A stretch of 64,000 nucleotides of DNA. Origin: Ranitomeya imitator (lineage: Eukaryota). The stretch lies in the NCBI RefSeq assembly GCF_032444005.1, contig NC_091282.1, positions 174,282,001 through 174,346,000 on the forward strand, written 5' to 3'. The position numbers were made by a program, and so were the translations under genes. The notes under the pieces were generated by a model, which was not told the DNA's origin, made no database searches, and saw only the letters and a list, made by a program, of their open reading frames with translations. Positions 10,752-64,000 of the stretch are shown piece by piece (the stretch's first letter is position 1; every line of letters starts with the position of its first letter).

Positions 10752-11063
10752 TAATATGCAAATTGCCTCTTCTGATAAAAAAGAGGACTTAAACTCTATA
10801 GCGCCACCTGTTGGAAGTAGCGATCCTACAAGTCACAATCAACTCTTTAACGAGTCGTGCAATATGACTTAGGATAAAAGCCAAATCAGTATCTCAATTC
10901 GCAGACACGGTGTTTCGGGCTGTTCAATCGTCAATGCGAAGCATGAGAACCAATTTGGCTAGGTGAGAGGCTCTGGACTGGGGTCTAAAGGGTATCATTT
11001 CTTGTTATGGAGAGTGACATACCATCTCTGGCTTGTCAAGGTAAGGAGGCTTATTCGCCGTGC
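10752..11063 (-). mobile_element. 312-bp retrozyme-like non-coding insertion carrying a hammerhead
   Basis: Flanked by aaccccgtg (10743-10751) and aaccctgtg (11064-11072), an 8/9 direct repeat. Contains the HHR motif at 10898-10940. Confidence 0.65.
10898..10940 (-). ncRNA. Type I hammerhead ribozyme, degenerate
   Basis: Minus strand: TTCGCA-TTGACGA-TTGAACA-GCCC-GAAAC-ACCGT-GTC-TGCGAA. Perfect 6-bp stem I, GAAAC, near-palindromic stem III and a GUC site. C3 is changed to U and the 5' arm of stem II is lost. Confidence 0.75.
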
Positions 11064-11091
11064 AACCCTGTGCACACTGCAATCTATCTGA

Positions 11092-11124
11092 CTGATGAAG
11101 GTCATTGTAGGACCAAAATGTTTC
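11092..11124 (+). ncRNA. Hammerhead-like remnant
   Basis: CTGATGA-A-GGTC-attgtag-GACC-AAAATG. AAAATG equals GAAACG after two CpG transitions. Stem I is not recoverable beyond 2 bp. Confidence 0.45.
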
Positions 11125-11172
11125 TTTATTTTTGGATTGCCTGCACAAAATAAAATTATCTGCTTACATCAT

Positions 11173-11491
11173 GGCTACGTTCACACTAGCGTTATGCTAG
11201 TTTGCGTCGGGTTTGCGTCGGGTGACGCAGCGGCGATGCATGCGTCATGCGCCCCTATATTTAACATGGGTGACGCATGCGTTTTTGTTTGTTGCGTTGT
11301 GCGATGCATGCGTCTTTTTTGCCGCGAGCGTCGGACCAAGAAAACGCAACAAGTTGCATTTTTCTTGCGTCCAAATTTCGGCAAAAAACGACGCATGCGT
11401 CGCAAAATGCAGCGTTTTTGCGTGCGTTTTGGTGCGTTTTTGCGTGCGTTGTGCGTCGCGTCGCCGACGCAACGCTAATGTGAACGTAGCT
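11173..11491. mobile_element. PIF/Harbinger-type MITE
   Basis: TIRs ggctacgttcaca / tgtgaacgtagc(t) and a palindromic interior. Related to 30757-31040. Confidence 0.8.
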
Positions 11492-11944
11492 AGCTGAGTG
11501 CCAAGTTTGCTACAAGATTGTTTTATCTTAGGGTGCCAGCTTCCACAGGAAGGCAGGGACAGACCAGGGTCAGAAAAGGCCTTTTCCTAGTCTAAACAAG
11601 GACCACTCAGATTCAGGTATTTGTCTCCCTGGTTTCTACGTTACCATGTGAATGTGCCTTGGCAGTCATAACACATTGTTTTCCAGCATCGCTCCCTTTG
11701 GTCTCCTGAGAAAAGTGACCTGTCGTCAGCTCCAGTGTTTCATGGGTAAAAGTCTATGAAAGCTTTGTTCTGGCTTTCATAGACTTGTATTGAGAGCTGC
11801 TGACATAGCTTCTGACTTCTGACCAGTCAGAAAAAGCACTTACAAGATGAGACCGGGGATTAACATTTAAAGCGCCAGCCCAGCACTGAAGAAACAAAAC
11901 GCTGGAGTCTTGCTTTAAGGGTGCCAACAATTTCAGCAATGAAT

Positions 11945-11950
11945 ATAGAT

Positions 11951-12030
<80 letters not shown>
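11945..12030 (+). repeat. (GATA)n microsatellite
   Basis: About 20 tandem tagatagata-type units. Confidence 0.97.
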
Positions 12031-12031
<1 letters not shown>

Positions 12032-12949
12032 AGATATAGGCTATGTCAAAATTACAAATAAATACCACCTATAAACACTGGTAAAAAAAATCGGAAAATC
12101 ATGGCATTTTTAAAAAAGCTCCCATAAAAAGTTTTAAAATACTGTGTGAGGAACCCCGAGGGTGAAAACCAATAACCTTTAGCACTACTGTTGGGGTATA
12201 ACTCAAGCCCCCAGCATTTCACAACTGAAAAAGTACTTTAGATTGTTGAAACCTCATATAGAGCATTGTAAGCAATAGGATATACTTTATTTAACTTTGC
12301 TCTCTTTCTTTCATTCTTTCTCTCTCTTGTTCTCACTCTCATTCTCTCTGCATATTTGCTCTACTCAGCACATGACTGAACTAGCAAAACACTGGATGTG
12401 TAATGAATATTGCTCATATCTGCTTTTCTGTACTCTACAGCTATTCATGTCTGATAAAAGTCCATGTTTTGGAACAGAAATATTGCTGTTGTTCATTTTG
12501 AACTCAATCTTAGATATAAACAAAATGACAAAATTCCTGCAGTGAATAAATAAATAGCAACAGTGCATGAAAATATCTTTGGGTACTTAGTTAACATAAT
12601 TTTGATTAAAAAGAAAAATAAAAGCCATCCTACTGCATCAAGGTGACCCTAATTGGGACAGTCCTAACCTCTAGTATTAAAACCTTGCCAAATGTAAAAT
12701 CACTTAAATGTGAATAATGCCAATCAGGACTGAGGCCCCACCTAAAGGACACCCATCCATGGGGAGCTATATAAACGTAATATCCAGCTCAAAGAAAAGA
12801 GAGGCCCTAATTCACATATACTTCATTTGACATATAGTAGGGTTTTAATACTACAGTTATTTTCATGCACTATTTCTATTTTTTTATTCACTGCAGTGAG
12901 TATTTGCTAATTTTGTTTTTAATCTTAGGTTTTGTTTGTTTAGTAGCAA

Positions 12950-13678
12950 GTCTTTGCCCCTCCTTTCGCCTCATTCAAAATAAAACAATAAAAAAAATCA
13001 AACCTACACATATTTCGTATCGCCGCATTCATAATCGCCTGATCTATCAATAAAAAAGGATTAACCTGATTGCTAAACAGCGTAGCGAGAAAAAAAATTG
13101 AAACGCCAGAATTACGTTTTTTTGGTCGCCGCTACATTGCATTAAAATTCAATAGAGGGCGATTAAAAGAACGTATCTGCACCAAAATAGTATCATTAAA
13201 AACGTCAGTTCGGCACACAAAAAATAAGCCCTCATGTGACCCCAGATCACGAAAAATAGAGACGGGTATGGGAAAATTGCGCAATTTATTTATTTTATTT
13301 TTTTTAGCAAAGTTTGGAATTTTTTTTTACCACTTAGATAAAAGGTAACCTAGACATGTTTGGTGTCTATGAACTCATAATAAACTGGAGAATCATAAAG
13401 GCAGTTTTAGCATTTATTGAACTTAGCAAAAAAGCCAAGCAAAAAACAAGTGTGGGATTGCACTTTTTTTGCAATTTCACCACACTTGGAATTTTTTTCC
13501 CATTTTCTAGTACACGATATGCTAAAACCAATGATGTCGTTCAAAAGTGTAACTTGTCCCGCAAAAACAAGCCCTCACATGGCCATATTGATGGAAAAAT
13601 AAAAAAGTTATGGCTCTGGGAAGGAGGGGAGTGAAAAATGAGAACGCAAAAATGGAAAAGGGCAAGGTCGTGAAGGGT
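12950..13678 (+). mobile_element. piggyBac-like non-autonomous element, right half
   Basis: Matches 36550-37271 and ends ggtcgtgaagggt|TTAA. Left boundary approximate. Confidence 0.75.
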
Positions 13679-13749
13679 TTAAATGGGGAGAGTGATGCTA
13701 AATTATTTCTGTTTTCAGGAGATAAAGAAAAATGCATAATATTGGACTT

Positions 13750-15436
13750 AGAACATCCCACAAAAAGATGATTACAAGGCAGTATTTGTTAATCAAAAGT
13801 GAATATTTATTAAAGTAATACAAAGTTTAAAACCATATTGACAGATTTAGGGGAATAGGACAATATCCCTCTCCAATATCCAATGTTGACGCGCAGCACC
13901 AAGTAACAAACAAGTACATCCCATATCAGATGTTATGGTGGGGAATACAAATGCCACTAATAATTCAATCCATGTATCGTATTAACGTGTAGTATAACTA
14001 CGGCAGATAACAATAGTACGCACTATATGATTGCACACTATGTGGAAACTACCAATCACACCCCACCAATATACAGCCTACACCACTGCCAAATATTACC
14101 AATACAGCTATACCAGATATTACTTGTGAAGCAACAAGTGGTCAGTGGACCGGTATAATTACCTATTTAGAGGCCGAGATATGGACTCCACGTTGTCACC
14201 TGGGCCCGCACGTCCGCCCCGACGCGCGTTTCGGACTCCTTTTTCAAGGGGCCTGTGATATGCCAGTGTCCCAGACCGTTTATAGTTCCGGTGAGCGGCA
14301 AGTACGCCGCAAACCCGGAAGTGACGCGCGCTGTTGCCCGGTCAACGGGCACGCCAGCCGGCGTCGGCGTCATAGCATGGGTGGAGCCGGGGTGGGCCCC
14401 AACCACACCAAGAGACGCCGAGAGCCGGCGGGCGCGACCGCAAGCAGGCAGCACGCGCGTGCAGGGACAGGATAGCAGGGACACCTGCATAAGACTAATA
14501 TGTTCTCCAAAATGGAGCTCCGTGGCCGCAGAGATGATCATTGCTTAACATGTCAATATGTTTACATATCAAAAAACAGCAGAAATATACATAACATATA
14601 CAGAATATAAATACATCAAAACACAAAACAAAATAACGCCAGGACATCCTTATATATACTATTAAACGCATATATATTTTATGGACATATAGGTGACCAA
14701 TATAATTATATTCCAGTACATCTTGCATTGCTTCACCATCCCATGCCATATATATGTATTCTTGTCCTGCCGTAGCTGTTTATCCCTGGACTCACAAAAA
14801 CATAAGGAACCAATCAACGATATATGATAATTCACTGAAAGAAAAGACATAACACATAAATTAATAAATAAATTAAAAAACACGGAAAAAGGAGAGAATA
14901 CCTTAGATATGCCACGATTTGTCCATAATTTTCCTCATACGAGTAAACTGCTTCACCAGTAATATCTGGTATAGCTGTATTGGTAATATTTGGCAGTGGT
15001 GTAGGCTGTATATTGGTGGGGTGTGATTGGTAGTTTCCACATAGTGTGCAATCATATAGTGCGTACTATTGTTATCTGCCGTAGTTACACTACACTTTAA
15101 TACTATACATGGATTGAATTATTAGTGGCATTTGTATTCCCCACCATAACATCTGATATGGGATGTACTTGTTTGTTACTTGGTGCTGCGCGTCAACATT
15201 GGATATTGGAGAGTGATATTGTCCTATTCCCCTAAATCTGTCAATATGGTTTTAAACTTTGTAGTACTTTAATAAATATTCACTTTTGATTAACAAATAC
15301 TGCCTTGCAATCATCTTTTTGTGGGGTGTTCTATGTAGTAGTTGATGATGGGCTAGCAGAGTCCTGTCGTTTGCATGGTTACTAATGTTAGAATTATTTG
15401 TATTTTACCATGCTTCGCTGTCATTTGTGTATATGG
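13750..15436 (-). mobile_element. Non-coding Penelope-type insertion with long inverted repeat and hammerhead
   Basis: 14-bp direct repeat ataatattggactt at 13736-13749 and 15437-15450. Inverted arms of ~385 bp at 13749-14133 and 14949-15333. HHR at 14216-14252. Confidence 0.75.
14216..14252 (-). ncRNA. Minimal type I hammerhead ribozyme, U3-A8 core variant
   Basis: Minus strand: GCCCC-TTGAAAA-A-GG-AGT-CC-GAAAC-GCGC-GTC-GGGGC. 5-bp stem I, intact GAAAC, self-complementary stem III (ACGCGCGT) and a GUC site. Confidence 0.7.
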
Positions 15437-15469
15437 ATAATATTGGACTTGAAGTTTATTTCGAAGCTG

Positions 15470-16380: not shown

Positions 16381-16979
16381 CCTATCGAATATTTAGTTTT
16401 CTACTAAAAACATTGAGCTCTTTACAATAGATTAAAATGTTGAAATAGTCTTTGTTGCCCTTGGTAGCTTCATTTTTGTAGCTGTTGTGTAGCTTGCCCC
16501 ATTTCTTTGTGAGGGTCACCACGTTATTCTGCTTTGTGAAGACTGAGCCTTTATTCAGATAAAACTTTATGTGAGAAATTTTTAGTTCTATCTTATTTGG
16601 GAGGACCATTTTATAGAGAATAAATTTCAACGTGTGCGTGTGAGATTTACGCAAAGATGTTTCTTTGCAGTTTAGACAGTTCTAGCTAGAGTTTTGACAA
16701 TTGGCACTACTACTTTTCGACTGAATCTCATAATGATCAATAATAATCTGATTTTTTTTATGTGTACTTGTAAATGTTGCTTGGAGCTCATTATGTTATG
16801 CAACTTTTGGCTTAGACGGAACTAAACATTTTAGACAAAAACTAAGCAACTAGAAAGTGAGTATTTATAAATCTTTCATTCTCAATCACAGAACTATTTT
16901 CCATTATGTGATGATGAAAATATTTTATTTGTAACATTCAGACTAGGAGAAAAGATGAGATATTTTATAGAGTCATATA

Positions 16980-18410
16980 CCGTATATACTCGAGTATAAG
17001 CCGACCCGAGTATAAGCCGACCCCCCTAATTTTGCCACAAAAAACTGGGAAAACTTATTGACTCGAGTATAAGCCTAGGGTGGAAATGCAGCATTTACCG
17101 GTGAATTTCAAAAATAAAAATAGATCATTATTTCCCCATAGCTGTGCCATATAGTGCTCTGCACCGTTCATATTTCCCCATAGGTGTGAACCATATAGTG
17201 CTCTGCACCGTTCATTGTGCCCCCTAGCTGTGCCATATACGGTGCTCTGCACCGTTCACTGTGCCCCATAGCTGTGCCATATACGGTGCTCTGCACCGTT
17301 CACTGTGCCCCATAGCTGTGCTGTGCCATATACGGTGCTCTGCACCGTTCACTGTGCCCCATAGCTGTGCCATATACGGTGCTCTGCACCGTTCACTGTG
17401 CCCCATAGCTGTGCTGTGCCATATACGGTGCTCTGCACCGTTCACTGTGCCCCATAGCTGTGCTGTGCCATATACGGTGCTCTGCACTGTTCACTGTGCC
17501 CCATAGCTGTGCTGTGCCATATACGGTGCTCTGCACCGTTCACTGTGCCCCATAGCTGTGCTGTGTCATATACGGTGCTCTGCACCGTTCACTGTGCCCC
17601 ATAGCTGTGCTGTGCCATATACGGTGCTCTGCACCGTTCACTGTGCCCCATAGCTGTGCTGTGCCATATACGGTGCTCTGCACCGTTCACTGTGCCCCAT
17701 AGCTGTGCTGTGCCATATACGGTGCTCTGCACCGTTCACTGTGCCCCATAGATGTTCCACATAAATTTGTGCCGCCGCTGCCGCAATAAAGAAAAAAAAA
17801 CACATACTCACCTCCCTTGATTGCAGCTCCCGGCGTCTCGTTCCGGCGCCTCCATCTTCCCGGCGTCTCTGCTCTGACTGATCAGGCAGAGGGCGCCGCG
17901 CACACTATATGCGTCATCGCGCCCTCTGCCTGAACAGTCAGAGAGCAGAGACGCCGGGAAGATGGAGGCGCCGGCCGGGAAGATGGATCGGCGCCCGGCG
18001 GCTGGAACGAGGACAGGTGAATATGCTATACTCACCTAGTCCTGGCGATCCTCGCGCTGTCCCCTCCTGTCTTCGGTGCCGCAGCTTCTTTCTCTATCAG
18101 CGGTCACCGGCACCGCTGATTAGAGAAATGAATAAGCGGCTCCGCCCCTATGGGAGGTGGAGCCGCTTATTCATTTCTGTAATGAGCGGTCCCACGTGAC
18201 CGCTGAAGAGAGGAAGAAACTGCAGCGCCGAAGCCCGTGGGACGGCAGGGACAGCGCGAGGATCGCTGGGACTAGGTAAGTATACCCTAGCGCCCTCAGC
18301 TCCTCACCTGCCGACCCCACCGCTACCGTGACTCGAGTATAAGCCGAGGGGGGCACTTTCAGCCCAAAAATTTGGGCTGAAAATCTCGGCTTATACTCGA
18401 GTATATACGG
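16980..18410. mobile_element. pogo/Tigger-like (Tc1/mariner superfamily) non-autonomous element
   Basis: TA|CCGTATATACTCGAGTATAAGCCGA ... TCGGCTTATACTCGAGTATATACGG|TA: perfect 25-bp TIR with a TA TSD. Confidence 0.88.
17140..17750 (+). repeat. 44/49-bp minisatellite inside the pogo-like element
   Basis: Unit gctgtgccatatacggtgctctgcaccgttcactgtgccccata (17227, 17271...). Later units gain an extra gctgt. Confidence 0.92.
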
Positions 18411-21110: not shown

Positions 21111-21151
<41 letters not shown>

Positions 21152-23043: not shown

Positions 23044-24047
23044 TAGTGTTGAGCGATACCTTCCGATATCAAGAAGTATCGGTATCGGATTGGATCGGCC
23101 GATATCCAAAAAATATACCAATACCCGATACCAATGCAAGTCAATGGGATACAAATATCGGAATGTAAATAAGCCCTTTCTGTCCTTCTACATCCTGTTA
23201 AGGAGGGGGGAAGAGTGTGGGCGGTGCGTGGGCGGACACTGTGCATGTCTGTGTGTGTGGGCGGGGTCTGTATGGGCCTGCCAGGGATCTGAATGGGAGT
23301 CTCGGGGCTCTGTGCAGGCTGCCGGGGCTCTGTGTGTGCCTGCCGGGGCTCTGTGCGGCCTGCCGGGGCTCTGTGTGGGCGTCTCAGGGGTCTGTGTGGG
23401 CCTGCCCCGGCAAGCCCGCACAGAGCCCCGGCAGCCCCACAGAGCCCCGGCAAGCCTGCACAGAGCCCCGGCAGCCTGCACAGAGCCCCGGCAGCCCGCA
23501 CAGACCCCCGGCAGCCCGCACAGAGCCCTGGCAGCCTGCATAGAGCCCCAGCAGGTCGCACAGAGCCCCGTCAGGCCGCATAGAGCCCCTGCAGGTTCGC
23601 ACAGAGCCCCGGCAGGCACACACAGAGCCCTGGCAGGCCGCACAGAGCACCGGCAGGCACGCACAGAGCCCTGGCAGGCCGCACAGTGCCCCGGCAGGCC
23701 GCACAGAGCCCCGACAGGCACACACAGAGCCCCAGCAGGCACGCACAGAGCCCCAGTAGGCACGCACAGAGCTCCAGCAGGCATGCACAGAGCCCCGGCA
23801 GGCCTCACAGAGCCTGGGCAGGCACACACAGTGCCCCCACGGTCATGCACAGACCCCGCCCGCACACACACACATGCAGTCTCCGCCCATGCACCGCCCA
23901 CACTCCATTATAGTGCATCATTGCACTATGGAAACTTCCGATTCCGGTATCAGATATCGCAAAAATATCGGAACTCAGTATCGGAGTTCCGATATAGCGA
24001 ATATCGGCCGATACCCGATATTTACAGTATCGGAATGCTCAACACTA
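23044..24047. mobile_element. hAT-type MITE with internal 20-bp minisatellite
   Basis: TIRs tagtgttgagc / gctcaacacta, with TSD ctgctgac / ctgctgcc (7/8). The interior is cagagccccggcag-type 20-mers. Confidence 0.88.
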
Positions 24048-30756: not shown

Positions 30757-31040
30757 GGCTGCGTTCACATTTGCGTTGTGCGATGTTGTGTTGGAGACGC
30801 AACGCACAACGCAAACAAAAATGCAACAAAACGCACGCTAAAACGCAGCGTTTTGCGGCGTATGCGTCCTTTTTTGCCGAAATTTGGACGGAAAAAAAAA
30901 AAGCAACTTGCTGCGTTTCTGCGCCCCACGCTTGCGGCAAAAAAACCGCATGCATCGCAAAACGCAGCACAACGCATGGCGCATGCGTCGCCGCGGCTGC
31001 GCCCGACGCAGCCTGGCAGAACGCAAATGTGAACGTAGCC
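30757..31040. mobile_element. PIF/Harbinger-type MITE
   Basis: TTA|GGCTGCGTTCACATTTGCG ... CGCAAATGTGAACGTAGCC|TTA. Confidence 0.9.
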
Positions 31041-36053: not shown

Positions 36054-37271
36054 CCTCTTTCTGACCTTGGATGGGATAGTACGTCTGAGGTCAGATACCG
36101 CGCTTTGATGCAGGGCTCCGGTGGTGAGCCCGCATCAAAGCCGGCACATGTCAGTTGTTTTCAACAGCTGACATGTGCCCGCAATAGCGGCGGGCGAAAT
36201 CATGATTCACCCGCCGCTATTAACTAGTTAAATGCTGCTGTCAAATGCTGACAGCAGCATTTAACCGGTGCTTCCGGCCGGGCGGCCGGAAATGAGCGCA
36301 TCGCCGACCCCCGTCACATGATCGGGGGTCAGCGATGCTTCTGCATTGTAACAATAGAGGTCCTTGAGACCTCTATGGTTACTGATGCCGGCCTGCTGTG
36401 AGAGCCACCCTGTGGTCGGCGCTCATAGCACACTTGCATTTCTGCTGCATAGCAGCGATCTAATGATTGCTGCTATGTAGCAGAGCCAAGCATGGCAAAA
36501 GTTAAAAAAAAGTTAAAAAATGTGAAAAAAAAATATAAAAGTTTAAATCACCCCCCTTTCGCCCCATTCAAAATAAATCAATGAAAAAAATCAAACCTAC
36601 ACATATTTGGTATTGCCGCATTCAGAATCGCCCGATCTGTCAATAAAAAAAAGGATTAACCTGATCGCTAAACGGGTTAGCGAGAAAAAAATTTGAACCG
36701 CCAAAATTACATTTTTTTAGTCGCCGCGACATTCTATTAAAATGCAATAATGGGTGATTAAAAGAACATATCTGCACCAAAATGCTATCATTAAAAAAAG
36801 CCATCTTAGCACACAATAAATAAGCCATAACCCGACCCCAGATCATGAAAAATGGAGCTGCTACGGGTATCGGAAAATGGCGCTTTTTTTTTCAGCAAAG
36901 TTTGGAATTTTTTTTCACCACTTAGATAAAGGAGAACCTAGCCATGTTTGGTGTCTATGAACTCGTAATGACCTGTGGAATCATAATGGTAGGTCAGATT
37001 TAGTATTTAGTTAACCTAGTAAAAAAGCCAATCAAAAAACAAGTGTTGGATTGCAATTTTTTTGCAATTTCACCGCACTTGGAATTTTTTCCCCATTTTC
37101 TAGTACACGACATGCTAAAACAAATGATATTGTTCAAAAGTAAAACTTGTTTTGAAAAAATAAGCCCTCACATGGCCATATTGATGGAAAAATAAAAAAG
37201 TTATGGCTCTGGGAAGGAGGGGAGCGAAAAATGAACACGGAAAAATGGAAAATTCCAAGGTCATGAAGGGG
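36054..37271 (+). mobile_element. piggyBac-like non-autonomous element, complete
   Basis: TTAA|CCTCTTTCTGACC ... GGTCATGAAGGGG|TTAA. Confidence 0.85.
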
Positions 37272-38344
37272 TTAAATAAAGGATGGCCAAAAGATGTTGG
37301 AAAGCAATCAGAAAAACTGTTGTCTTAGGACAAAAAAAGGATGTCAGTGTGTCTTAATGTGTCTTCAACAAATAAAGTAGCACTCTCTAGCGCTATAGCA
37401 TGCAAACATGAAATATATGAAATTTGAAATGCATTACTGCGCTAGAAAATATGAAAAATAGAGAAAACATAGGGCATAAATTGGCCAGTTCATGTATACC
37501 CAGCAGCCACGATAAGGCAATTCTCATTGCTGGGAACCTATCTAGTGTGAATCCTCTCTTAGACTGAAGTCTACATTTATATAGGAAGGTAGAACCCCGC
37601 TGTAAATAAAAACCCCTTGAGGCAGAAGGGTTGAGTGCTCAGTCAGAAAGCACATGTATACAAATATACCACCAGTACATCACTAATTTTAGTACAGCGA
37701 ACAATTGCAATGTCAGGTCTGCCCAATATATAATTGTATCACATGACATTTCAGCTCCCAGTATGTCTTTAAATAACAAATACCGTTTTTTCCTTTCTGA
37801 GCGCTATTATGTGCCAAAACAACAGTTTTTGAACACGTATGGGATATTGCAACATTTAGGAGGAGCTGCATAATACATTTTGAGGTTAATTTTCTCCTAT
37901 TATCTCTCTTGAAATTGAAAACTTTGCAGCTAAGCAATATTTCAATTTCTAATTTTCATTTCTTAATTGTTCTGTAGCATCTGAAATGTTAACATATTAC
38001 CTGCCAGCAGTTTAGAATAGTTTGACTGTGCAGCGTGTAAGTTTTTTTCAGTATATAGGTGCCGCAAAGTAATTTAAAAACTGAATAGGTCAGAAATAAA
38101 AAGGATTTGCAAATTTTATTGAAAAAAAATCATGCTATTTTTTAACCTTTCTAATATCCTAATAAAATAAGTTAAGAAATGATTGTGACATAAAGTAGAC
38201 ATATGGGAAATTTTTAAATATGGTTGAAGAGTATAAGCATTCAGTTTAATAATTTTTAAGATTTTCAATAAGTTTAAAATATTTGAAGAAAATAGCTAAA
38301 TATATTGACCAAAATATGACTCTAGTTAAAAATACACTGTGTCA

Positions 38345-41273: not shown

Positions 41274-42332
41274 CAGCTGACATGTGCCTGCAATAGCGGC
41301 GGGTGAAATCGCGATTCTCCCGCCACTATTAACTAGTTAAATGCTGCTATCAAACGCTGACAGCGGCATTTAGCCGGGTGGCCGGAAATGAGTGCATCGC
41401 TGACCCCGTCACATGATCGGGGGTCAGCGACGCTTCTGTATAGTAATCATAGAGGTCATTGAGACCTCTATGGTTACTGATCCCCGGTAGCTGTGAAAGC
41501 CACCCTGTGGTCAGCGCTCATAGCACACCTGCATTTCTGCTATCTGATATTGCTGCTATGTAGTAGAGGTGATCGAGTTGTGCCAGCTTCTAGCCTCCTA
41601 TGGAGGCTATTGAAGCATAGCAAAAGTAAAAAAAAAGTAAAAAAAAGTAAAAAAATAAAAAAAATATAAAAGTTTAAATCACCCCTCTTTCGCCCCATTC
41701 AAAATAAATCAATAAAAAAAATCAAACCTACACATATTTGGTATTGCCCCGTTCAGAATCGCCCGATCAATCAATAGAAAAAAGCATTAACCTGATCGCT
41801 AAACAGCGTAGCGAGAAAAAAATTTGAAATGCCAGAATTACGTTTTTTTGGTCGCCGCGACATTGCATTAAAATATAATAACGGGCGATCAAAAGAACAT
41901 ATCTGCACCAAAATTGTATCATTAAAAACGCCAGCTCGGCATGCAAAAAATAAGCCCTAAACCGACCCCAGATCATGAAAAATGGAGACGCTACGGGTAT
42001 CGGAAAATGGCGCAATTTTTTTTTAAGCAAAGTTTGGAATTTTTTTTCACCACTTTGATAAAAAGTAACCTAGTCATGTTAAGTGCCTATGAACTCGTAA
42101 TGACCTGGAGAATCATACTAGCAGGCCAGTTTTAGCATTTAGTGAACGTATCAAAAAAGCCAAACAAAAAACAAGTGTGGGACTGCACTTTTTTTGCAAT
42201 TTCACCGCACTTGGAAATTTTTTCCCGTTTTCTAGTACATGACATGCTAAAACCAATGATGTCGTTCAAAAGTACAACTAGTTTTGCAAAATATAAGCCC
42301 TCACATGGCCATATTAACAGAAAAATAAAAAA

Positions 42333-42740
42333 TGCATGTAGAGAGCTGCGGAGACACCATCACGTGTTTCTCAACACAGGCAGTGAATAGCCAGGCCTTT
42401 CCCCGCGAAGGAACAACCAAGGTAAGGACAGCATGTAATAAAGGAAAACATCCAATAAAGGAAAACCACCTATGCCAAGCATGGTATCCATCCACAGACA
42501 GCTGTTTTGGGGTTTTTGCCCCTCATCAGTGTGGAGTAGGAAACTGGCTATCAGGAGCAGTGCCTAGTAGAAAGTCTATAAAGGCACGGATGATTGACCT
42601 CGTGGAGACCAAAACATCCAACACCGCGGAGACACGATCACGTGTTTCTCAACGCAGTGATCTTGAGAAACACGTGATGGTGTCTCCGCAGTGTTGGATG
42701 TTTTGGTCTCCACGAAGTCAATCATCCGTGCCTTTATAGA
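42333..42740 (-). mobile_element. 408-bp retrozyme/mini-PLE-like insertion with hammerhead and terminal hairpin
   Basis: 12-bp TSD aaaaataaaaaa (42321-42332, 42741-42752), present once in the uninterrupted paralogues. Partial direct repeat at a 278-bp period, 77-bp inverted arms, and an HHR at 42491-42535. Confidence 0.8.
42491..42535 (-). ncRNA. Type I hammerhead ribozyme with G12A substitution
   Basis: Minus strand: TCCACA-CTGATGA-GGGG-CAAAAA-CCCC-AAAAC-AGCT-GTC-TGTGGA. All stems pair and stem III (ACAGCTGT) is palindromic. The only core deviation is G12 to A at 42508. Confidence 0.85.
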
Positions 42741-43780
42741 AAAAATAAAAAAGTTATGGCTCTGGGAAGGAGGGGAGCGAAAAACGAACACGGAAAAATG
42801 GAAAATCCCAAGGTCATGAAGGGGTTAAATGACAAGGTTTGTTCAAACTTTTGGTCTGTACTGTATGTTAAAGCATTCCAGAGTTATTACCTTACCACAT
42901 GATGTAACACGTCAGATTTGAAAATTGGGGCTCTGTCATTAAGCTCAAAATTTTCTCCATCACTAATTGGTTAATTTGAAGTTTGTGTGTAGCTTACATT
43001 GCAAGTGCAGCATCCACATTTATTCATACAAGAACAGCAAATGAGGGTTTGTCAGCAATCACAAACGAAATAGCAAAATGACATTCATCGGGTAATTGGA
43101 TCTTTTTTACTTGAACAAAAATCATTTTTCTCGGCAGCACATCACTCGATGTTAACAGAAGATATGCTGCTGATAACATGATGTGTATCTTGACAGAATG
43201 ATTTAATAGTGATCATTTTTACCCCATCATTCTTCGTCAGCCTCGGTAAAAAGACTGCTAAATAAGCATTGAACAACTTAAATATAGTTAATTGGTGCTT
43301 GCTTAACCAGCTGAGATTAGCTTGTGTAATTGCATCATATGTTTATCCGTGATGATGCAGTATGTTAGCATTTGGTGCCCCACTTTTAATTTTGGCCCAA
43401 GGCCACATTTTGCCTAAAATCAGCTCTCTACCAACATAAAAATTCTTACAGACAAAAGAAACCTCTTCATGATGTCATTCTGCAAACATTTTTGTATGAT
43501 GTCAGTCATGAGCGCACAGCACCACCCAGCTGCACATCTACTATGTATGAATCTAAACGTCAGTCGCCATCCTCATAAATGTTTAGCAGATGTCTTTAAA
43601 GGATCTAATGCTGTTTTCAAACTGTATTGGGTATGTGTGTTGTGTATGTGCTTGTTGTGTGTGTCCTTTATATGAAAAGATATCCACTGTACTTAATTGA
43701 TTAGTGGTTTGTCGACTTCCTGGGAAAGCAGTGTGGATGTTAAGTGGTCATAATCACATTTCATTGTTAATATTTATTAA

Positions 43781-55265: not shown

Positions 55266-55304
55266 TTAACCCTTTCAGAGCAGCTTCAGTGGAGAACTCC
55301 TGAA

Positions 55305-56285: not shown

Positions 56286-58787
56286 TTGCTCTTTTTGTTT
56301 TTTTAAATTAGCTTAGAATCTATCTTTAGATTTGCTATCTTACATTCTGCAAATAAAGAAAGCCAAAATATTTCTACATTTTTAGACTTTTCACCTAGAC
56401 TTAAAAATTCCAGCTGACTTGACTTAACATATGAATTAATTAAATCTATTTTTCTTACCTTGAAATATCTCAGCTTGTAGTTCCTTTGTTGGACAATGCT
56501 GGGCTCTGGTCATCAGCACATCTGTCTTCAGCACGTCTGTCTTCAGCACGTCTGGCACTTGTAGTACTCCTGCTAATTGTCAATCCATCTGGCACCTGTT
56601 AAGTCTCCTTACTCATAGGTTCTGTGAGAGCATGGGGCACAGTATCCCTAAATTATTAGCTTACAAATTTCACACACATAGCATGCTGTTGACACATTTC
56701 TCCTACAGAAGCAGATAATACATTTCAATCATACAGCATGTTTTCAAATTTTCCAGAGAAAGCTGATTCAAAATTTCACACTCAGTCAAAAAGGCACAGT
56801 ACCCCCACAGCTCAAAAATGTCTGCTACAGTAGCATATGTTAAAAATGGCACCGATGAAAAGCTGGCTGTATGATCTTGAATTGAGGTGGCGGTCCACAG
56901 TAAGGCTTGCTATCAACAGTGAAGTTAAACATTTCACATAGCAAGTTTTAGACACATTTCACCCCACAGCTAAAAAAGTACCTCCTGTAGCCACAAGACA
57001 TACAACTGCCAGCCCCAGCCCCTTTGCCTTGGAATGTCTCCCAATGCTCTTGCCTTAGGATTTTGGGGGCATGAAGTGTTTCCCTTGAAAACATTAGTGT
57101 TCAAAGCAGTCAACCAAATCTTAATGCTTCAGTTAGGGATAATGTAATTGTACTCTGTTTCTATTTTCTTTTCTGTTCCAACTGGGGCCATGATTATGAG
57201 GGGACCCAGTGGAACACAAAGTGAAGGTACTGGATACACTCTCAGCCATTCAATCTCAAACCATCTAAAGGCAAGGTTGCAGAGTACACACATGCAATGG
57301 AGAATCATGTTTCCATTCTAAAGACGCAATCTGATAAATGTATAACACATCCAAGACAGGCAGCAGTCAAGCAAATTAACCACTTTTTCAACTGTCAGCA
57401 GCTGATATTGAAGTATATGTTAGCCATCCGTGACAATTTAGAGGGTCTGCAATTGGAATGATTAGTTAAATAATTTAATGGGCGTTAAGCAATTATTTTT
57501 TAGGCACAGTACTTATACACACATGGCTGCAGAGTACATAGAGGTTTTTGGTCACAATTAGTGTTGAGCGATACCTTCCAATATTCAGAAATATTGGTAT
57601 CGGATTGGTGGAACTCGGATACCCAAAAGGAGGCACCTAAGCCAAAGGCTCTGCCTGGAACCAGCTGACGGTACTGGAATCAGGATGTGGAGCAAAAGGT
57701 ACAAGAGCAAAAGACACTGCTGAGAACCAGCTGACAGTACTGGAACCCGGATGGGTAGCAGATGGTACAAGAGCCAATGGAACTACAGAGGACCAGCTAA
57801 CGGTACTGGAACCCGATTACTAAGCAGGAGGTACCCGTGCCAGAAAGCACTACCAAGGACCACCGGACGTTGGTGGAACTCGGATACCCAGAAGGCGGCA
57901 CCTAAGCCAAAGACTCTTCCTGGAACCAGCTGACGATACTGGAACCAGGAGGACCTATTCAAGATTGTCTTCCAAAGAACCAGATAATGGTGCTGGAACT
58001 CAGATAGGCAGCAGAAAGTCCACAGGAAAAAAATAATTGCTAGGCCGTGAGCCGGTCGTAGTTACCGAAAACCCACAGTCCTTCAAGGGGAGCTTGTCCT
58101 ATTGGCACTACGGAACCAGCCTTGATTGCCAGTTCTTAAAACCCACATAGGAAGCACCTAAACTGCAGGTACCATAGATTTGGCTAACCCGACCGCAACC
58201 CGACAGGACAATGTATTGTAGGCAAAGTGACCTTGACACTACCCGAAACAGCTGGTGTGCTTGAACCAGGCTGGGCAGGAGGGAGTACCCATGAAAAAGA
58301 CACTTCTGAACAGCAACTGGCGGTGTTGGAGCCCAGGGATTACATGAGAAACAGAGTGTAGGCCGAGGCCTAATTGGAGCAAGTTTCAAATCTGTATTAG
58401 TGTGAGTGTGGAGTTAGCAGGACAAATTGCCGGATACACAGCTGGGGATCAGCTGATGTTACTGAACCCCAATAACACGCCAGCAAGTGTTGACTGTTCA
58501 GACAGCACTTCCGAGCAGCAACTGGCAGTGTTGGAGCCCAGGGTCAATCAGGGTGTAGGCCGAGGCCTAAATGGAGCAAGTTTAATATCTGATGTAATGT
58601 GAATGTGGAGGGAGCAGGAGACATTGCCGGACACACAGCAGGGGAGCAGCTGGCACTACTGAACCCCACTAACACAGGAGCTAGTGTTTTTCTCTGTGCA
58701 GACGGCACTTCTGAGCAGCAACTGGTGGTGTTGGAGCCCAGGGAATCCAGGAGAAACAGAGTGTAGGCTGAGGCCTACACTTGAGAC

Positions 58788-59220
58788 TAGGGTTGAGTGA
58801 CTTTTCTTTTTATAGGATCGGGTCGGGTTTCACGAAACCCGACTTTTTCAAAAGTCAGGTCGAGTGAAATCGTCCGATCCTATAGAAAAGTCGGGGTCGG
58901 GGTCGGCCGAAACACGAAACCCAATGCGGTGCATTGGGTTTCTAATGGTTCCCAGGGTCTGAAGGAGAGGAAACTCTCCTTCAGGCCCTGGGATCCATAT
59001 TTAAGTGTAAAATAAAGAATCAAAATAAAAAATATAGATACACTTACCCTCGGACGCGCCCTGGTTCTCGCCGGCAGCCTTCCTTCCTAAGAATCAGCGC
59101 CTGAAGGACCTTCGATGACGTCGCGGCTTGTGATTGGTCGTGTGAGAGGTCACATGGCCGTCACACGACCAATCACAAGCCGCGACGTCATCTAAGGTCC
59201 TTCAGGCGCTGATTCTTAGG
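58788..59220. mobile_element. hAT-type MITE fragment (43781-44500 family)
   Basis: Begins tagggttgagtgac and is the reverse complement of about 44060-44500. Confidence 0.8.
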
Positions 59221-59239
59221 GTTACTAGGGATCCTAACA

Positions 59240-59527
59240 CTAACCCTAGGGATCCTAACCCTAACCCTAGCTATTTCTGTTTATAGTGGGTTTTCTAGTT
59301 GATTTTGATGATTGGCATCTGTCACACACTTCTCATCATGCATTTCAAAAACACAAACGCGGTAAAAAATGCTTGTAAACGCGTCAAAACGCCGCGTTTT
59401 TTTTACCACATGCAAAAACGCATGCGTCTAAAAAACGCAGCATTTGCACGCATTTACATGCGTTTTTTGCACCACATGCGTTTGCGTTAAAAACGCTGCA
59501 TTTTTTAATGCAAATGTGAAACTAGCC
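59240..59527. mobile_element. PIF-type MITE right part with CCCTAA repeats
   Basis: Contains cctaaccctaaccctag and ends tgtgaaactagcc|TAA. Confidence 0.6.
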
Positions 59528-59692
59528 TAACACAGGAGCTAGTGTTTTTCTCTGTGCAAACGGCACTTCCGAGCACCAACTGGTGGTGTTGGAGCCCAGG
59601 GTCAATCAGGGTGTAGGCCGAGGCCAAATTTGAGCTAGTTTAATATCAGTTGTAGTGTGAGCGTGGAGGTAGCAGGACAAATTGACGGATAC

Positions 59693-60365
59693 GATACGAT
59701 ACGATACAATACACTTATGGTATCACAGCAGCACAACCTAAATCATAAAAATCATAAAGGAATTACATAGTTGACATGACAGTGGAGTTGACAGAAGAAC
59801 ATTATACATTATACATTAGAATAGGACATACACAACAAGTGAACTGAAATGTAGAGAAATAAGTAGACATTCACCTTGGTGGTTTAACCCTAATGTTATT
59901 GTTGTACATTCCGATGGCAGTTGGCACAAACGATTTCCTATATTTTTCCTTCTTACACCTCAGAAGTATAAGCCGGTTACTGAAGGTGCTCTTCTGTCTC
60001 ATGAATAGCTCATATAATAGATGTGCATTATTGTTCATAATTGCCATACACTTTTTCAGAGTTCTTTTCTCCACTACCTCCCCAAAAGAGTCCAGATTGC
60101 AGCCCACAGCAGAACTTGCCTTCATAATAATCTTATTCAGCTTATTAGCATAAGAGGCCAGCACACTACTACCCCAGCACGTGATTGCAAAAAAGATGGC
60201 ACTTGCCACTACAGATTGGTAGAACATTTCTAACATTTTGCTACACACATTAAAAGACCTCAGTTTCCTTAGGAAATACAATCTGCTCATCCCCTTCTTG
60301 TAGACAAACTCTGAGTGGCATCTCCAGTCCAGTTTGCTATCCAAATGGACCCCAGCTATCCAAAT
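59693..60365 (-). mobile_element. Rex1/Babar-type LINE 3' end (5'-truncated)
   Basis: ORF 59871-60344 reads GVHLDSKLDW..SRLYFLRKLRSFNV..FYQSVVASAIFFAITCWG..RKSFVPTAI. (GTATC)n tail near 59693, with ggatac on both flanks. Confidence 0.85.
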
Positions 60366-60865
60366 GGATACACAGCAGAGGACCAGCTGACGTTACTGAA
60401 CCCAACTAACACAGGAGCTAGTGTTTTTCTCTGTGCAGACGGCACTTCCGAGCACCAACTGGCGCTGTTGGAGCCCAGGTATTACAGGAGAATCAGAGTG
60501 TAGGCTGAGGCCTACACTCGAGGCAGTTTAATATCTAAAATACAAATGAACAAAGGGGGCTGCCGCGCTAATACACATGTGCCGGTGCACAACCTTATGT
60601 GCCTGTAGTCACTGCATGTTCTGGAAATGTTAGGGCGGCATTTACTTGTGTGCCCGAAATCTCTGGTGATGCAGCTAGGTAAGCTGAGTCCACGGTTGAG
60701 GAGAGTCCTCCCTTTGCACCGTATATGGCTCCTGAAACCCCCTCTGCAAGAACCGGCAGTCTGCCTCGGCCGAAGGCACCACCGTATAGTAGCGTGGTGT
60801 GCGGGGGGCATGGTTAGTGGTGGCGTCACCTACCCGTGTAAGACGGACATGTACAAGTGCCAATT

Positions 60866-60898
60866 ACCGACGCATTTTGAGGGAACCTTTCTCAAGGT
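60866..60898 (-). ncRNA. Hammerhead remnant in the PLE 3' region
   Basis: Minus strand: ACC-TTGAGAA-A-GGTTCCCTC-AAAAT-GC-GTC-GGT. U3-A8 core; AAAATG equals GAAACG after CpG transitions; GUC site; 3-bp stem I. Confidence 0.55.
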
Positions 60899-61518
60899 TG
60901 TTGTACCTGTACTATCGCTAACCATTTATACCCCCATGTTATTCCCTGCTGATGTGCCAATCTGCCTGATTGGCTTACGAATGGCATTATCTTTGACACT
61001 CTGCTAACCAAGCTTGCACGTGATGGATTCTGCATTACCACTAACTTACATATGTAAACTTCACAAATGTTACCCTATAGGAAAAGAAGGATAACTTCCC
61101 TTTGCATTAGATACTTGTTATCTAAGGGGCTATTTGTTTCTCCAGTCTCTAAAAACCCTATTAAATACCCATTTTGATGTACGTGCAATAGAGAGATCCC
61201 ATGTCCTAGCTCAAACATACAGTGCAAATATAAAAACAGTGCAAATATAACCCCCTGTGACAGTATAAAAATTGTATTTTATTCATCACAAAAAATAAAA
61301 ATATATAAAAATATATACATGTATGTGTATAAACATTTAAATATGAATAAAAACTACAATATTAACCCCAAAAACACATACAAACATTTTTTTAAATTGT
61401 AATTTATATATAAAAAACCTTTATAATTTCATTGTTTCTATATATACTTACATTTAAATTTATTACCACTCAGAAATCCTTTACAATCATTAAAATAATG
61501 GTACCAAATATTGCTCAA

Positions 61519-63221
61519 CTACAGGGCATACAATTCTATTTCGTAAATGAGTCCCTTTGGGGCCAAACTGTCAAATGTAAAAATCCACTTAGACTCAACT
61601 CTTGACATGCTCCTCAAAAAGTCCCCGCCTCGAGGATTTTTTTGCACAATCTGGATGCCGCAGAATGACATTCCATTACACGCCCGGCCGTGTTTCTCTG
61701 CATAATGGCGTGACAGAGGATGTCCCCCAAATCCCTTGGCAATATTATCCAAATGTTCCTTTATCCTATCTCGCAATCTTCTCTTAGTGCGGCCCATATA
61801 GAGTTTGTCACAGGGGCACCTGATTGTGTAAATGACCTCTGTCAAATAACAGGATATGTTGTCTTTAATAATAAATGCTTCGGTCCTCTCTGTGTTCCAA
61901 AACAATGTTTGAACCGACTTTTTACATTTTGTCCGTACGCAACAGGGGCAAGTCCCACAAGTAGTGAACCCCCTACTATTTGGTCCTGAGTTACTTATTG
62001 GTTTTATATGTCCACCATTCATTCCCATTCTAATAGTTGGGGCTATGATATACCCAATATTCTTAGCCTTTCTGAAAACAAATCTCGGTTTATCAGATAT
62101 TAGTTCTCCCACAATTCTATCCTTTTGAATTATGTTAGTGAATCTTTTTCAGTTCGCATGATATTGAGTGATAAATGGTATTTTCCCAATTTCTTGCGCT
62201 ATACTCAAGGGTTCCGGTATTGTTTTTGTTCCATAGATCAAATTCCCTCTGGGAACGGCCTTAACCTCTTGCCTAACTTTCTTCAGAGATGTCTCACAGT
62301 ACCCTCTTTCTGCAAATTGGTTCTTTAAATAATTAGATTCCTCATTATAATCATCTTCTTTTGTGCAATTCTGTCTTATGCGTGTAAATTAGCTTTTAGG
62401 AATATTTGAAAGCCATGACGGGAGGTGACAACTGTCTGTATGGGTGTAACTATTACAATCCACTTCCTTATGGTAGCATTTGGTGAATATGATATGTAGA
62501 TGTTCAAATCCAAAAAATTAACATTAGATGTAGTCATGGTAGGTGTAAATTCCAAACCATATGAGTTATTATTCAATCCCCTTAAGAAAGATATTAAGAT
62601 CCGACTGTGTCCCTTCCCATATAAATAACACATCAATGAAGCATTGCCACATAATTAGGTAATTAGGCCTTTTCTTAGTTGGCCATTCTGATAAATATGT
62701 GGCTTCTCCCATTTTCCCACATACAAATTAGCATAACTTGGGGCAAACTTTGTACCCATAGCCGTGCCCCAAGTTTGCAAATAAAACTTTTTACAGTAAA
62801 TAAAATAATTGTGTTGGAGAATAAATTCCATACTCTCCACAATATATGCCATTTGGGTAGGATTATAGGAGTGTAGCTGTTCTAAAAAATATTCAGCTGA
62901 TGAGCAACCCTTCTCTTGGTTGATGACCGTGTATAAAGACTTGATGTCTAGCATGCCAAGTATATAATTACTGGCCCAGCTGGTAGTTTCTAAAATCCGT
63001 ATCGCATCCCCTGTATCTTTTAGATAGGCTGGGAGTAGTGTAACGCATTTCTGCAAGTGTACATCTACATACTCTGATAAATTAGCCGTCAGGCAATTTA
63101 TGCCTGATACGATGGGTCTACCTGATGGGCATGTGGAATTCTTATGCAGTTTCAGGATGTGATAGAAGACTGCCACACTTGGTGTTTTAGTATTAATATA
63201 TTGGAACTCCTTCTTATTCAA
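61519..63221 (-). pseudogene. Penelope RT and GIY-YIG endonuclease (fragmented)
   Basis: RT: FYHILKLHK..SGRPIVSG..LDIKSLYT..QTWGTAMGTKFAPSYANLYV. Endonuclease: CGTCPCC..VIYTIRCPCDKLYMGRTKRRLRDRIKEH..ESKWIFTFDSLAPKGL. Confidence 0.92.
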
Positions 63222-64000
63222 AATGCCTAAAGATTTACCCCTTCAGGGCTAGAAAGTTCAATTTTTTTACATACTGGGCAGTGGGATCACCTAATAACTT
63301 CTTATATGTAACAACATCGTCTAAGAGCCTCGATGCTTCCATATGGTACATACTGCGATCCATGATCACTATGCTTCCCCCTTTATCAGCACCCCGAGAT
63401 TACTTGGGGCATATCTGGGATTCCCACCTTTCATTTTCCTAATGTCAGAAGTGACTAATGTTTGAAAACCATTAGAATATTCACTAATAGGTTTGAATGC
63501 GGAGGGTTTAGCTAATGTAAATATTCCCTAGAACTCTGATTTTGTGTACTTGCACCTGTCTGTTCTTTTATCAAAAAATATTTTTTAATAGCTAAGTTTC
63601 GGAGGAACTTTTTCATAAATACGTATAACATAAAGGGACTTGATTTCGATGTAGGGGCAAACTTTAAACCTTTTTGTAAGAGGGATTCCTCTTCCTTCGT
63701 TAATGTATGAGAACTGACATTAAAAATTTTTTGCCTAGATATTTCCTTATTTATTTTCGTTTTGGTGAGTTTCCTCCCTCCTCTCTTCCCACGTTTGGTT
63801 TTGCGCCTCGTACCTGAAAAAATTTTTGATACGTTTTAGAGGTACTTCTCTTCTTGGGGCCTAGCGTTCCTTTGTTGGAGAATCTATGGGGCTGGTTTTT
63901 TTTAGGGTTCCTATTTATGATACTATTTGTACCAAAACTTTCCTACTGTCCATTTACCTGTTGTACTCCGTGTACTAGGTCTAGTAATGCCCACTTCCTG

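What the first reader, a model, noticed from the sequence alone, without database searches (positions are those of the whole stretch)
10752..64000. A Penelope helper plus several unrelated hammerhead-bearing, TSD-flanked non-coding retroelements in one window
Seen: five type I hammerhead motifs (10898-10940 -, 11092-11124 +, 14216-14252 -, 42491-42535 -, 60866-60898 -). Three lie in short insertions that share no other sequence, each with its own 9-14 bp direct flanking repeat and no ORF. One lies about 620 bp 3' of a PLE GIY-YIG ORF on the same strand. In three motifs the damage to GAAAC(G) is exactly what CpG deamination gives. Established: PLEs carry minimal type I HHRs with palindromic stem III in their terminal repeats, and metazoan non-LTR retrozymes (e.g. 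newt satellite 2) are short HHR repeats thought to be PLE-mobilised. Inference: this genome hosts several distinct retrozyme/mini-PLE families moved in trans by PLE RT and endonuclease. They are invisible to ORF-based annotation and may be uncatalogued.
Basis: partly seen in the sequence, partly recalled or inferred. Interest (0 to 1): 0.8.

Follow-up and report, generated by a model that had tools for sequence, protein, structure and literature searches.

The report
Frog hammerhead retrozyme insertions, dead Penelope
This poison-frog window holds three separate non-coding retro-insertions (two carry real but broken self-cutting hammerhead RNA motifs, the third only a candidate) plus a frameshifted Penelope retrotransposon, a kind of element already described in amphibians, so it is a clean example rather than a discovery.

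Summary
Partly confirmed. Two of the five claimed hammerheads are real.

- **42491-42535 (-):** the only one Rfam sees (HH9, 23 bits, below the gathering score). Its one core defect is A for G12.
- **10898-10940 (-):** broken in this copy, but contigs of other copies give a canonical type I hammerhead.
- **14216-14252 (-):** a plausible, unproven U3-A8 minimal variant.
- **60866-60898 (-):** unsupported.
- **11092-11124 (+):** chance; it lies outside the repeat.

All three insertions are real, non-coding and unrelated to each other, and each has its own target-site duplication:

- 312 nt with a 9-bp duplication.
- About 405 nt with a 13-14-bp duplication, proven by two empty paralogous sites.
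- 1.69 kb with a 14-bp duplication and 388-nt inverted arms.

The first family is very high-copy and tandem elsewhere (unit about 331 nt). The second shares words with many runs of at least four organism labels.

The Penelope ORF (reverse transcriptase plus GIY-YIG) is real but spread over three reading frames, so this copy is not a working helper.

Amphibian non-LTR retrozymes and their Penelope origin are published. This scan had already followed up the same kind on other pieces of this genome. Verdict: new members of a known kind, low to moderate interest.

The parts
10752..11063 (-). 312-nt monomer of a very high-copy hammerhead retrozyme family (family unit about 331 nt)
   Evidence: Summed contig depth is about 6e5 in two organisms. 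Back-joints 11065>10752/3 with 17-18 nt between show tandem units elsewhere.
10898..10940 (-). Decayed type I hammerhead of that family. This copy lacks 2-3 nt of helix II and has C3>U.
   Evidence: The loose-end consensus behind 10924 and the 'put in' rows at 10924 and 10927 give the family form CUGACGA-GGGC-CAACA-GCCC-GAAAC-ACCGUGUC. No Rfam hit for this copy. Helix I is 6 bp.
10743..10751 (.). Left target-site duplication AACCCCGTG (right copy AACCCTGTG at 11064-11072, 8 of 9)
   Evidence: It sits exactly at the limits of family homology given by the joints.
13750..15436 (-). 1.69-kb non-coding composite insertion: an inverted 5'-truncated copy followed by a longer copy (Penelope-style head-to-head)
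   Evidence: Arms 13746-14133 and 14949-15336, 388 nt, 97.7% identical. 14-bp exact flanking repeat at 13736-13749 and 15437-15450. Arms are low-copy, at depth 100-340.
14216..14252 (-). Candidate minimal hammerhead with a U3-A8 core: GCCCC UUGAAAA A-GGAGUCC GAAAC GCGC GUC GGGGC
   Evidence: Passes the descriptor (0.027 expected with strict GAAA). Local contig depth is about 9,900 against about 200 in the arms. No Rfam hit. Fold z-score 0.0, with a competing CCUU/AAGG hairpin.
42333..42737 (-). About 405-nt retrozyme insertion: 78-nt inverted 5' fold-back, 10-nt spacer, one 278-nt unit, about 30 nt of the next unit, then 13 nt
   Evidence: Two paralogous empty sites at 13593 and 37186. 278-nt period and inverted arms. 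Its words are held in runs of at least four organism labels.
42491..42535 (-). Type I hammerhead with A in place of G12. Helix I 6 bp, helix II GGGG/CCCC, palindromic ACAGCUGU, predicted cut after 42497.
   Evidence: Rfam Hammerhead_HH9 23.2 bits, E 9e-4. Descriptor hit. Fold z-score -2.34.
42319..42332 (.). Left target-site duplication AGAAAAATAAAAAA (right copy at 42738-42752 with one extra A)
   Evidence: Both empty sites read GGAAAAATAAAAAAG once.
61522..63814 (-). Penelope-like element ORF remnant (reverse transcriptase plus C-terminal GIY-YIG), split over frames -1, -2, -3, -2
   Evidence: tblastn against the 898-aa protein P0008, aa 115-891. RT piece 41% identical. GIY-YIG by Pfam at 21.1 bits. 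2018 homologues, matching the C-termini of 700-900-aa proteins.
60866..60898 (-). Hammerhead-like string 3' of the PLE ORF; not supported as a ribozyme
   Evidence: No Rfam hit. Helix I only 3 bp, 0.41 expected by chance. Folds as a plain AACCUU/AAGGUU hairpin, z-score -0.08.
11092..11124 (+). Chance CUGAUGA...AAAA string; not part of any element
   Evidence: No helix I. No Rfam hit. Lies beyond the end of family homology at 11065.

Best explanation
The window carries three independent, old-to-young insertions of non-coding elements of the amphibian non-LTR retrozyme / Penelope-derived class, plus one dead Penelope-like element.

**Family A (10752-11063).** A unit of about 331 nt that is tandem elsewhere in the genome. 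Its consensus encodes a canonical type I hammerhead. This copy is a single 0.94-unit monomer whose ribozyme is broken.

**Family B (42333-42737).** A 278-nt unit carrying an HH9-like type I hammerhead with a short palindromic helix III (the dimer-dependent amphibian type). It was laid down as 1.1 tandem units with a 78-nt inverted 5' fold-back.

**Third insertion (13750-15436).** A young head-to-head composite with a possible U3-A8 minimal hammerhead about 30 nt downstream of a TATA box.

**Likely mechanism (inferred from the literature, not shown here).** Multimeric transcripts self-cleave through dimeric hammerheads. Monomers are ligated into circles by a tRNA ligase. A PLE reverse transcriptase and GIY-YIG nuclease supplied in trans by intact copies elsewhere then copy them into nicked DNA. 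That would give the 9-14-bp duplications and the tandem and inverted junctions.

**Shown here.** Insertion boundaries, duplications, an empty site, motif anatomy, copy abundance and tandem joints.
For: **Empty sites and TSD for family B:**

**Hammerhead in family B:** Rfam HH9 hit and fold z-score -2.34.

**Family A** (except where noted):
- Depth is about 6e5 in organisms A and B.
- Back-joints 11065>10752 have 17-18 nt between.
- The loose-end consensus gives CUGACGA/GGGC-CAACA-GCCC/GAAAC.
- The same core and helix II in a metagenome contig score 23.7 bits on HH9.

**Chance expectation:** three descriptor hits against 0.073 expected.

**Independence and abundance:** the insertions share no sequence. 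Family B words are held at a share of 0.13 or more in runs of at least four organism labels, including 4-7-Mb data sets of organisms F and B (share 0.37-0.40).

**PLE identity:**

**Literature:**
- Amphibian type I HHRs with a weak palindromic helix III act as dimers, in units of about 300 nt with TSDs longer than 4 bp (PMC7229834).
- Retrozymes are PLE derivatives, all 7 sampled Amphibia have them, and the mean unit is 316 bp (bioRxiv 10.64898/2026.07.22.740005).
- The U3-A8 covariation occurs in PLE min-HHRs (PMC4209133).
Against: - No hammerhead reaches Rfam's gathering score.
- Both verified ribozymes are inactive in these copies.
- Neither inserted copy is bounded by the predicted cleavage site.
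- The 14216-14252 motif has a helix II of only 2-3 bp, against 6-8 bp in published min-HHRs. It has no Rfam hit and no fold signal.
- No RNA evidence: the one putative RNA run tracks DNA copy number.
- No sequence link was found between any insertion and the PLE in the window.
- Family B's consensus at position 12 was not obtained.
Confidence: 0.8

Rival explanations
1. The 13750-15436 element is not hammerhead-related. It is a low-copy fold-back or TIR-type element, or a chimeric retrocopy, and the 14216-14252 string is a chance match (or a GNRA-loop hairpin) inside a CpG-rich promoter-like segment.
For: No Rfam hit at E<=10. Fold z-score 0.0, with a competing CCUU-GAAA-AAGG hairpin. Helix II is 2-3 bp only. 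The arms are low-copy and the interior 14516-14833 is essentially single-copy. No homologous ORFs. The descriptor was tuned post hoc.
Against: Expected count is 0.027 per window for strict GAAA, helix I of at least 5 bp and a palindrome of at least 6 nt. Local depth of about 9,900 is confined to roughly the motif, against about 200 in its flanks, in two organisms. The 14-bp exact TSD is not adjacent to the right arm, so a TIR-transposon model has no TSD. U3-A8, an unpaired base 5' of stem II and a palindromic helix III are published PLE min-HHR traits.
Confidence: 0.35
2. The 60866-60898 string is a genuine, CpG-decayed minimal hammerhead of the 3' pseudo-LTR of the PLE at 61522-63814.
For: Same strand, about 620 nt 3' of the ORF stop. 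A TATAAA about 28 nt upstream, as at 14216-14252. PLEs carry HHRs in both flanking repeats. The two assumed changes are CpG transitions.
Against: No Rfam hit. Helix I is 3 bp, with 0.41 such hits expected by chance. It needs a variant core plus two assumed mutations. It folds as a simple 6-bp hairpin. No significant similarity to the 14216 region (score 19 against 16.7 +/- 2.2). The PLE's 3' boundary could not be defined, and no close relative was found.
Confidence: 0.3
3. All the motifs are chance, and the insertions are ordinary SINE- or MITE-type repeats unrelated to ribozymes.
For: Rfam whole-window searches are empty. The loosest descriptor gives only 17 hits against 8.8.
Against: HH9 hit. 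Canonical consensus and tandem joints. Three hits against 0.073 expected. No poly-A or TIR ends on the insertions.
Confidence: 0.03

Closest known systems
Amphibian non-LTR retrozymes (newt satellite 2, axolotl HHR_Amex1/2 repeats; Cervera and de la Pena 2020, PMC7229834)
   Same: Non-coding units of about 280-330 nt. Type I hammerhead with a 4-bp helix II and a 2-3-bp helix III over a palindromic loop, which implies dimer-dependent cleavage. Tandem arrays elsewhere. TSDs longer than 4 bp.
   Different: The copies here are single monomers or 1.1-mers with dead ribozymes. The unit sequences are specific to this frog lineage. No circRNA evidence was obtained.
Penelope-like elements and their pLTR minimal hammerheads (Cervera and de la Pena 2014, PMC4209133; Li, Clavereau and Pollet 2026 preprint)
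   Same: RT plus GIY-YIG ORF. Insertions with partial tandem and upstream inverted copies. Variable 9-14-bp TSDs. A U3-A8 core variant, an unpaired base before stem II and a palindromic helix III at 14216-14252.
   Different: The local PLE is frameshifted and its pLTRs could not be defined. The candidate min-HHR has a far shorter helix II than published ones. No sequence homology was shown between the insertions and a PLE pLTR.
Rfam Hammerhead_HH9 (RF02275), conserved amniote type I hammerhead
   Same: The best-scoring model for 42475-42547(-): same core, a 4-bp helix II with a CAAAAA-type loop, and a short helix III.
   Different: Score is 23 bits against a gathering score of 52. It sits in a repeat, not in a conserved intronic locus, and has A12 instead of G12.

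Membership tests
Type I hammerhead ribozyme (Rfam clan CL00010) | Conserved core CUGANGA ... GAAA ... UH | tested here: inconclusive
   - 42491-42535: all core positions present except A12.
- Family A consensus: complete; this copy is not.
- 14216-14252: U3-A8 variant.
- 60866-60898 and 11092-11124: multiple deviations.
Type I hammerhead ribozyme (Rfam clan CL00010) | Score at or above a family gathering threshold | tested here: not met
   No hit at gathering scores. The best is HH9 at 23.2 bits against 52.
Type I hammerhead ribozyme (Rfam clan CL00010) | Self-cleavage at the H17 site | not testable with these tools
   Needs in vitro transcription of consensus monomers and dimers.
Non-LTR retrozyme | Tandem-capable short unit (about 150-450 nt), each unit with a type I HHR | tested here: met
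   Family A: back-joints give a unit of about 331 nt. Family B: 278-nt period over 1.1 units.
Non-LTR retrozyme | No protein-coding capacity | tested here: met
   Only spurious ORFs, with no exact or homologous proteins on record for 14167-14541; 42332-42739 had only the exact-match look-up.
Non-LTR retrozyme | Insertions flanked by TSDs longer than 4 bp | tested here: met
   TSDs of 9, 14 and 13-14 bp. One is verified against two empty sites.
Non-LTR retrozyme | Expressed as linear and circular RNA | tested here: inconclusive
   Contigs of a run only guessed to be RNA hold the families in proportion to DNA copy number. No raw reads were available.
Penelope-like element | Single ORF with a PLE-type RT followed by a GIY-YIG endonuclease | tested here: met
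   Collinear match to aa 115-891 of an 898-aa protein with RVT_1 and GIY-YIG domains.
Penelope-like element | Intact ORF (needed to act as a helper) | tested here: not met
   The match switches frame -1 > -2 > -3 > -2. The 5' end runs off the window.
Penelope-like element | Flanking pLTRs carrying hammerheads | tested here: inconclusive
   Only the weak 60866-60898 string is present. The 5' side lies outside the window. Fetched relatives lack flanks.
PLE minimal hammerhead (min-HHR) | Long helix II (6-8 bp) with an unpaired 5' base, helix I of 4-5 bp, palindromic helix III | tested here: not met
   14216-14252 has the unpaired A, a 5-bp helix I and the palindrome ACGCGCGU. Its helix II is only 2-3 bp.

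The most novel reading that the evidence does not exclude
The young 13750-15436 element (arms 97.7% identical, CpG observed/expected 1.05 in its core) may be a still-active, low-copy PLE-derived non-autonomous element. A Pol II-type promoter (ETS-like sites and a TATA box) would start transcription about 30 nt upstream of an intact U3-A8 hammerhead with an unusually short helix II, and the ribozyme would trim the 5' end of the transcript. The roughly 37-nt motif alone is shared with about a thousand other genomic sites in two frog species. That would make it a conserved, uncatalogued ultra-minimal hammerhead variant.
Probability: 0.2. Interest if true: 0.5.

Novelty: new member of a known kind. 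Interest (0 to 1): 0.27.

Why it matters
It shows that ORF-blind, motif-plus-TSD reading can recover real retrozyme insertions in a large frog genome. It also shows that about two in five such motif calls are noise once the core is allowed to "decay".

The families themselves add lineage-specific members to a class already described in amphibians and already tied to Penelope-like elements, so no open question is moved. The one item worth a specialist's look is the U3-A8 motif with a 2-3-bp helix II. It appears conserved at many sites and sits just downstream of a promoter-like segment.

Tried and rejected
- **Rfam, whole window:** no hammerhead, either at gathering scores or at E<=10. The miRNA hits (mir-9, MIR5048) are fold-back repeats, and MIR5048 is the 78-nt hairpin of family B.
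- **Exact-protein look-ups:** spurious ORFs across two insertions, nothing on record.
- **Word-indexed homology searches:** the GIY-YIG piece and the 124-aa ORF gave no hits.
- **DNA of PLE relatives:** fetched for P0008 and P0001. The contigs are too short and have no hammerhead in their flanks.
- **Homology between the 14216 and 60866 regions:** not significant.
- **Metagenome scans:** the 14216 motif gave none. The family A core gave one unrelated contig with a hammerhead of identical core and helix II. It is useful only as a control for what Rfam scores such a motif.
- **Expression:** no run is on record as RNA, and only contigs were available.
Full report
**Setting.** Earlier notes of this scan place the window in a poison-frog genome. 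It is repeat-rich, 40% G+C, with CpG observed/expected 0.55.

**Check of the five motifs**

Rfam finds no hammerhead in the whole window, either at gathering scores or at E<=10. When the candidates are searched in 221-321-nt pieces, which loosens the filters, only 42475-42547(-) matches. It hits Hammerhead_HH9 at 23.2 bits, E 9e-4, well under the gathering score of 52. The alignment shows helix I, CUGAUGA, helix II GGGG/CCCC with a CAAAAA loop, and a short helix III. The only core defect is A in place of G12. The other four give no hammerhead hit at E<=10.

I wrote a descriptor and compared it with dinucleotide shuffles. It was chosen after seeing the candidates.

| Descriptor version | Sites found | Expected from shuffles |
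|---|---|---|
| Loose enough to admit all five | 17 | 8.8 +/- 2.3 |
| Helix I of at least 5 bp and a palindromic helix III of at least 6 nt | 3 (10934-, 14247-, 42529-) | 0.073 in 300 shuffles |
| Same, but helix I of at least 3 bp (needed for 60895-) | 4 | 0.41 |

At the loosest level most hits are noise. The site at 11092(+) has no helix I at all.

**Family A (10752-11063, sense on the minus strand)**

I laid contigs of two DNA runs of the same organism, one DNA run of a second organism and one possible RNA run on 10700-15450.

- 10752-11065 belongs to a very abundant repeat. Summed depth is about 6e5, against about 8-12 for single-copy pieces.
- Contigs in all three DNA runs join 11065 back to 10752/10753 with 17-18 nt between. 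Elsewhere the family is therefore tandem, with a unit of about 331 nt.
- Most contigs stop matching at 10924 and continue with a consensus that, read on the minus strand, gives CUUUGCA CUGACGA GGGC-CAACA-GCCC GAAAC ACCGUGUC UGCGAA. That is a canonical type I hammerhead.
- The window's copy has lost GG and C from the 5' strand of helix II and has C3>U. Its damage is an indel plus a transition, not CpG decay of GAAAC.
- A metagenome contig with the identical core and helix II scores 23.7 bits on HH9. That is about what Rfam gives this architecture.
- The insertion is flanked by AACCCCGTG and AACCCTGTG, exactly at the homology limits.
- The predicted cleavage site (10903/10904) lies mid-insert, so the template was not a simple self-cleaved linear monomer.
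- The motif at 11092-11124(+) lies beyond the homology end at 11065. It is chance.

**Family B (42333-42737, sense on the minus strand)**

- The window holds three copies of a very high-copy repeat of about 1 kb: 12931-13684, 36526-37277 and 41657-42830.
- The third copy is interrupted. Aligning it with the other two gives two empty sites and a 13-14-bp duplication, AGAAAAATAAAAAA.
- Read on the minus strand, the insert is a 78-nt inverted arm (75 of 78 complementary), a 10-nt spacer, one 278-nt unit holding the hammerhead, about 30 nt of a second unit, and 13 further nt.
- Its 31-mers are held at a share of 0.13 or more in 20 listed runs from 10 studies and at least four organism labels, including data sets of only 4-7 million letters (share 0.37-0.40, organisms F and B). 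The family is therefore abundant and shared between species.

**Third insertion (13750-15436)**

- A 14-bp exact repeat, ATAATATTGGACTT (17 of 18 if extended), flanks a 1.69-kb non-coding stretch. It has 388-nt inverted arms at 97.7% identity.
- The left arm abuts the duplication. The right arm is separated from it by 97 nt. A TIR-transposon reading therefore has no TSD, while an upstream inverted, 5'-truncated copy followed by a longer copy (the Penelope pattern) fits.
- The arms are low-copy and the AT-rich interior is essentially single-copy.
- Local depth at 14233-14235 is about 9,900 in organism A and about 7,400 in organism B, while the 159-nt bin mean is about 2,300. From that I infer that only about 40 nt, roughly the motif itself, is shared with many other sites.
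- The motif reads GCCCC UUGAAAA A-GGAGUCC GAAAC GCGC GUC GGGGC.
- U3-A8 covariation, an unpaired base before stem II and a palindromic helix III are all described for PLE minimal hammerheads (PMC4209133). Those have helix II of 6-8 bp; here it is 2-3 bp.
- Rfam sees nothing. The fold has no signal and prefers a CCUU-GAAA-AAGG hairpin.
- A TATAAA lies about 30 nt upstream, within a CpG-rich segment (observed/expected 1.05).
- I rate it about 60-65% likely to be hammerhead-derived.

**The PLE**

- The piece 61519-62112(-) matches aa 701-891 and has 2018 homologues, mostly C-termini of 700-900-aa proteins. Pfam GIY-YIG scores 21.1 bits.
- tblastn maps aa 115-891 collinearly over 63814-61531 in frames -1, -2, -3, -2. 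This is a near-full-length but frameshifted copy, not a working helper.
- The nearest relatives are only about 40% identical.
- The string at 60866-60898(-) lies about 620 nt 3' of the stop. It has no Rfam hit, a 3-bp helix I, and needs a variant core plus two assumed CpG changes. It folds as a plain hairpin.
- It shows no significant similarity to the 14216 region.

**Comparison with what is known**

- A 2026 preprint finds them in all seven amphibians sampled (mean unit 316 bp, 57 families in Xenopus). It derives them from PLE pLTRs. No dendrobatid is named there.
- This scan had already followed up the same kind on other pieces of this genome.

**Verdict.** These are new members of a known kind.

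Noticed in passing
window 11173-11493 (and 30785-30899, inverted): MITE-like element of about 321 bp with 20-nt terminal inverted repeats (GCTACGTTCACACTAGCGTT). Contigs in three DNA runs join 11172 directly to 11494, which is an empty site or a polymorphism.
   Followed up: partly
window 12931-13684, 36526-37277, 41657-42830: Three copies of a repeat of about 1 kb with summed contig depth over 1e6 and A-rich loose ends. Probably a SINE/LINE-tail family.
   Followed up: partly
window 9950-10660, with 10053-10334 nested: Tc1/mariner-like transposon remnant carrying a nested palindromic MITE. The palindrome is what Rfam weakly reports as mir-9 and mir-1781 on both strands.
   Followed up: no
window 59871-60344 (-): 157-aa ORF with a Pfam ALKBH8_N match (E 9e-9), of the kind seen at the C-terminus of non-LTR retrotransposon RTs. 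It bounds the region 3' of the PLE. Nearby repeats at 58297-59692 and 60366-60536.
   Followed up: no
window 40164-40631 (-): ORF with a weak RT_RNaseH match (E 6e-5), probably an LTR-retrotransposon fragment.
   Followed up: no
window 17147-17853; 4624-5280; 23414-23823; 3043-3676: Tandem arrays with periods of 44-49, 31-34, 20 and 167 nt. The 20-nt array is G+C-rich and underlies long spurious ORFs on both strands.
   Followed up: no
window 13701-13715 and 15392-15406: A second 13-of-15 match (AATTATTTCTGTTTT / AATTATTTGTATTTT) lies 20-30 nt upstream of both copies of the 14-bp TSD of the 1.69-kb insertion. The duplicated flank may be longer and rearranged, or this is an AT-rich coincidence.
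   Followed up: no
L003 783-850 (-), metagenome contig Ga0307474_10214395: A hammerhead (HH9 model, 23.7 bits) with core and helix II identical to the frog family A consensus but unrelated flanks, just downstream of a tRNA-like GCTCAGTTGGTAGAG box. The source organism is unknown.
   Followed up: partly
window 14255-14313: Contigs in both organisms skip these 59 nt, which hold the TATA box, and join 14254 to 14314, right at the 5' edge of the candidate hammerhead's helix I. This is an indel variant among related copies.
   Followed up: no
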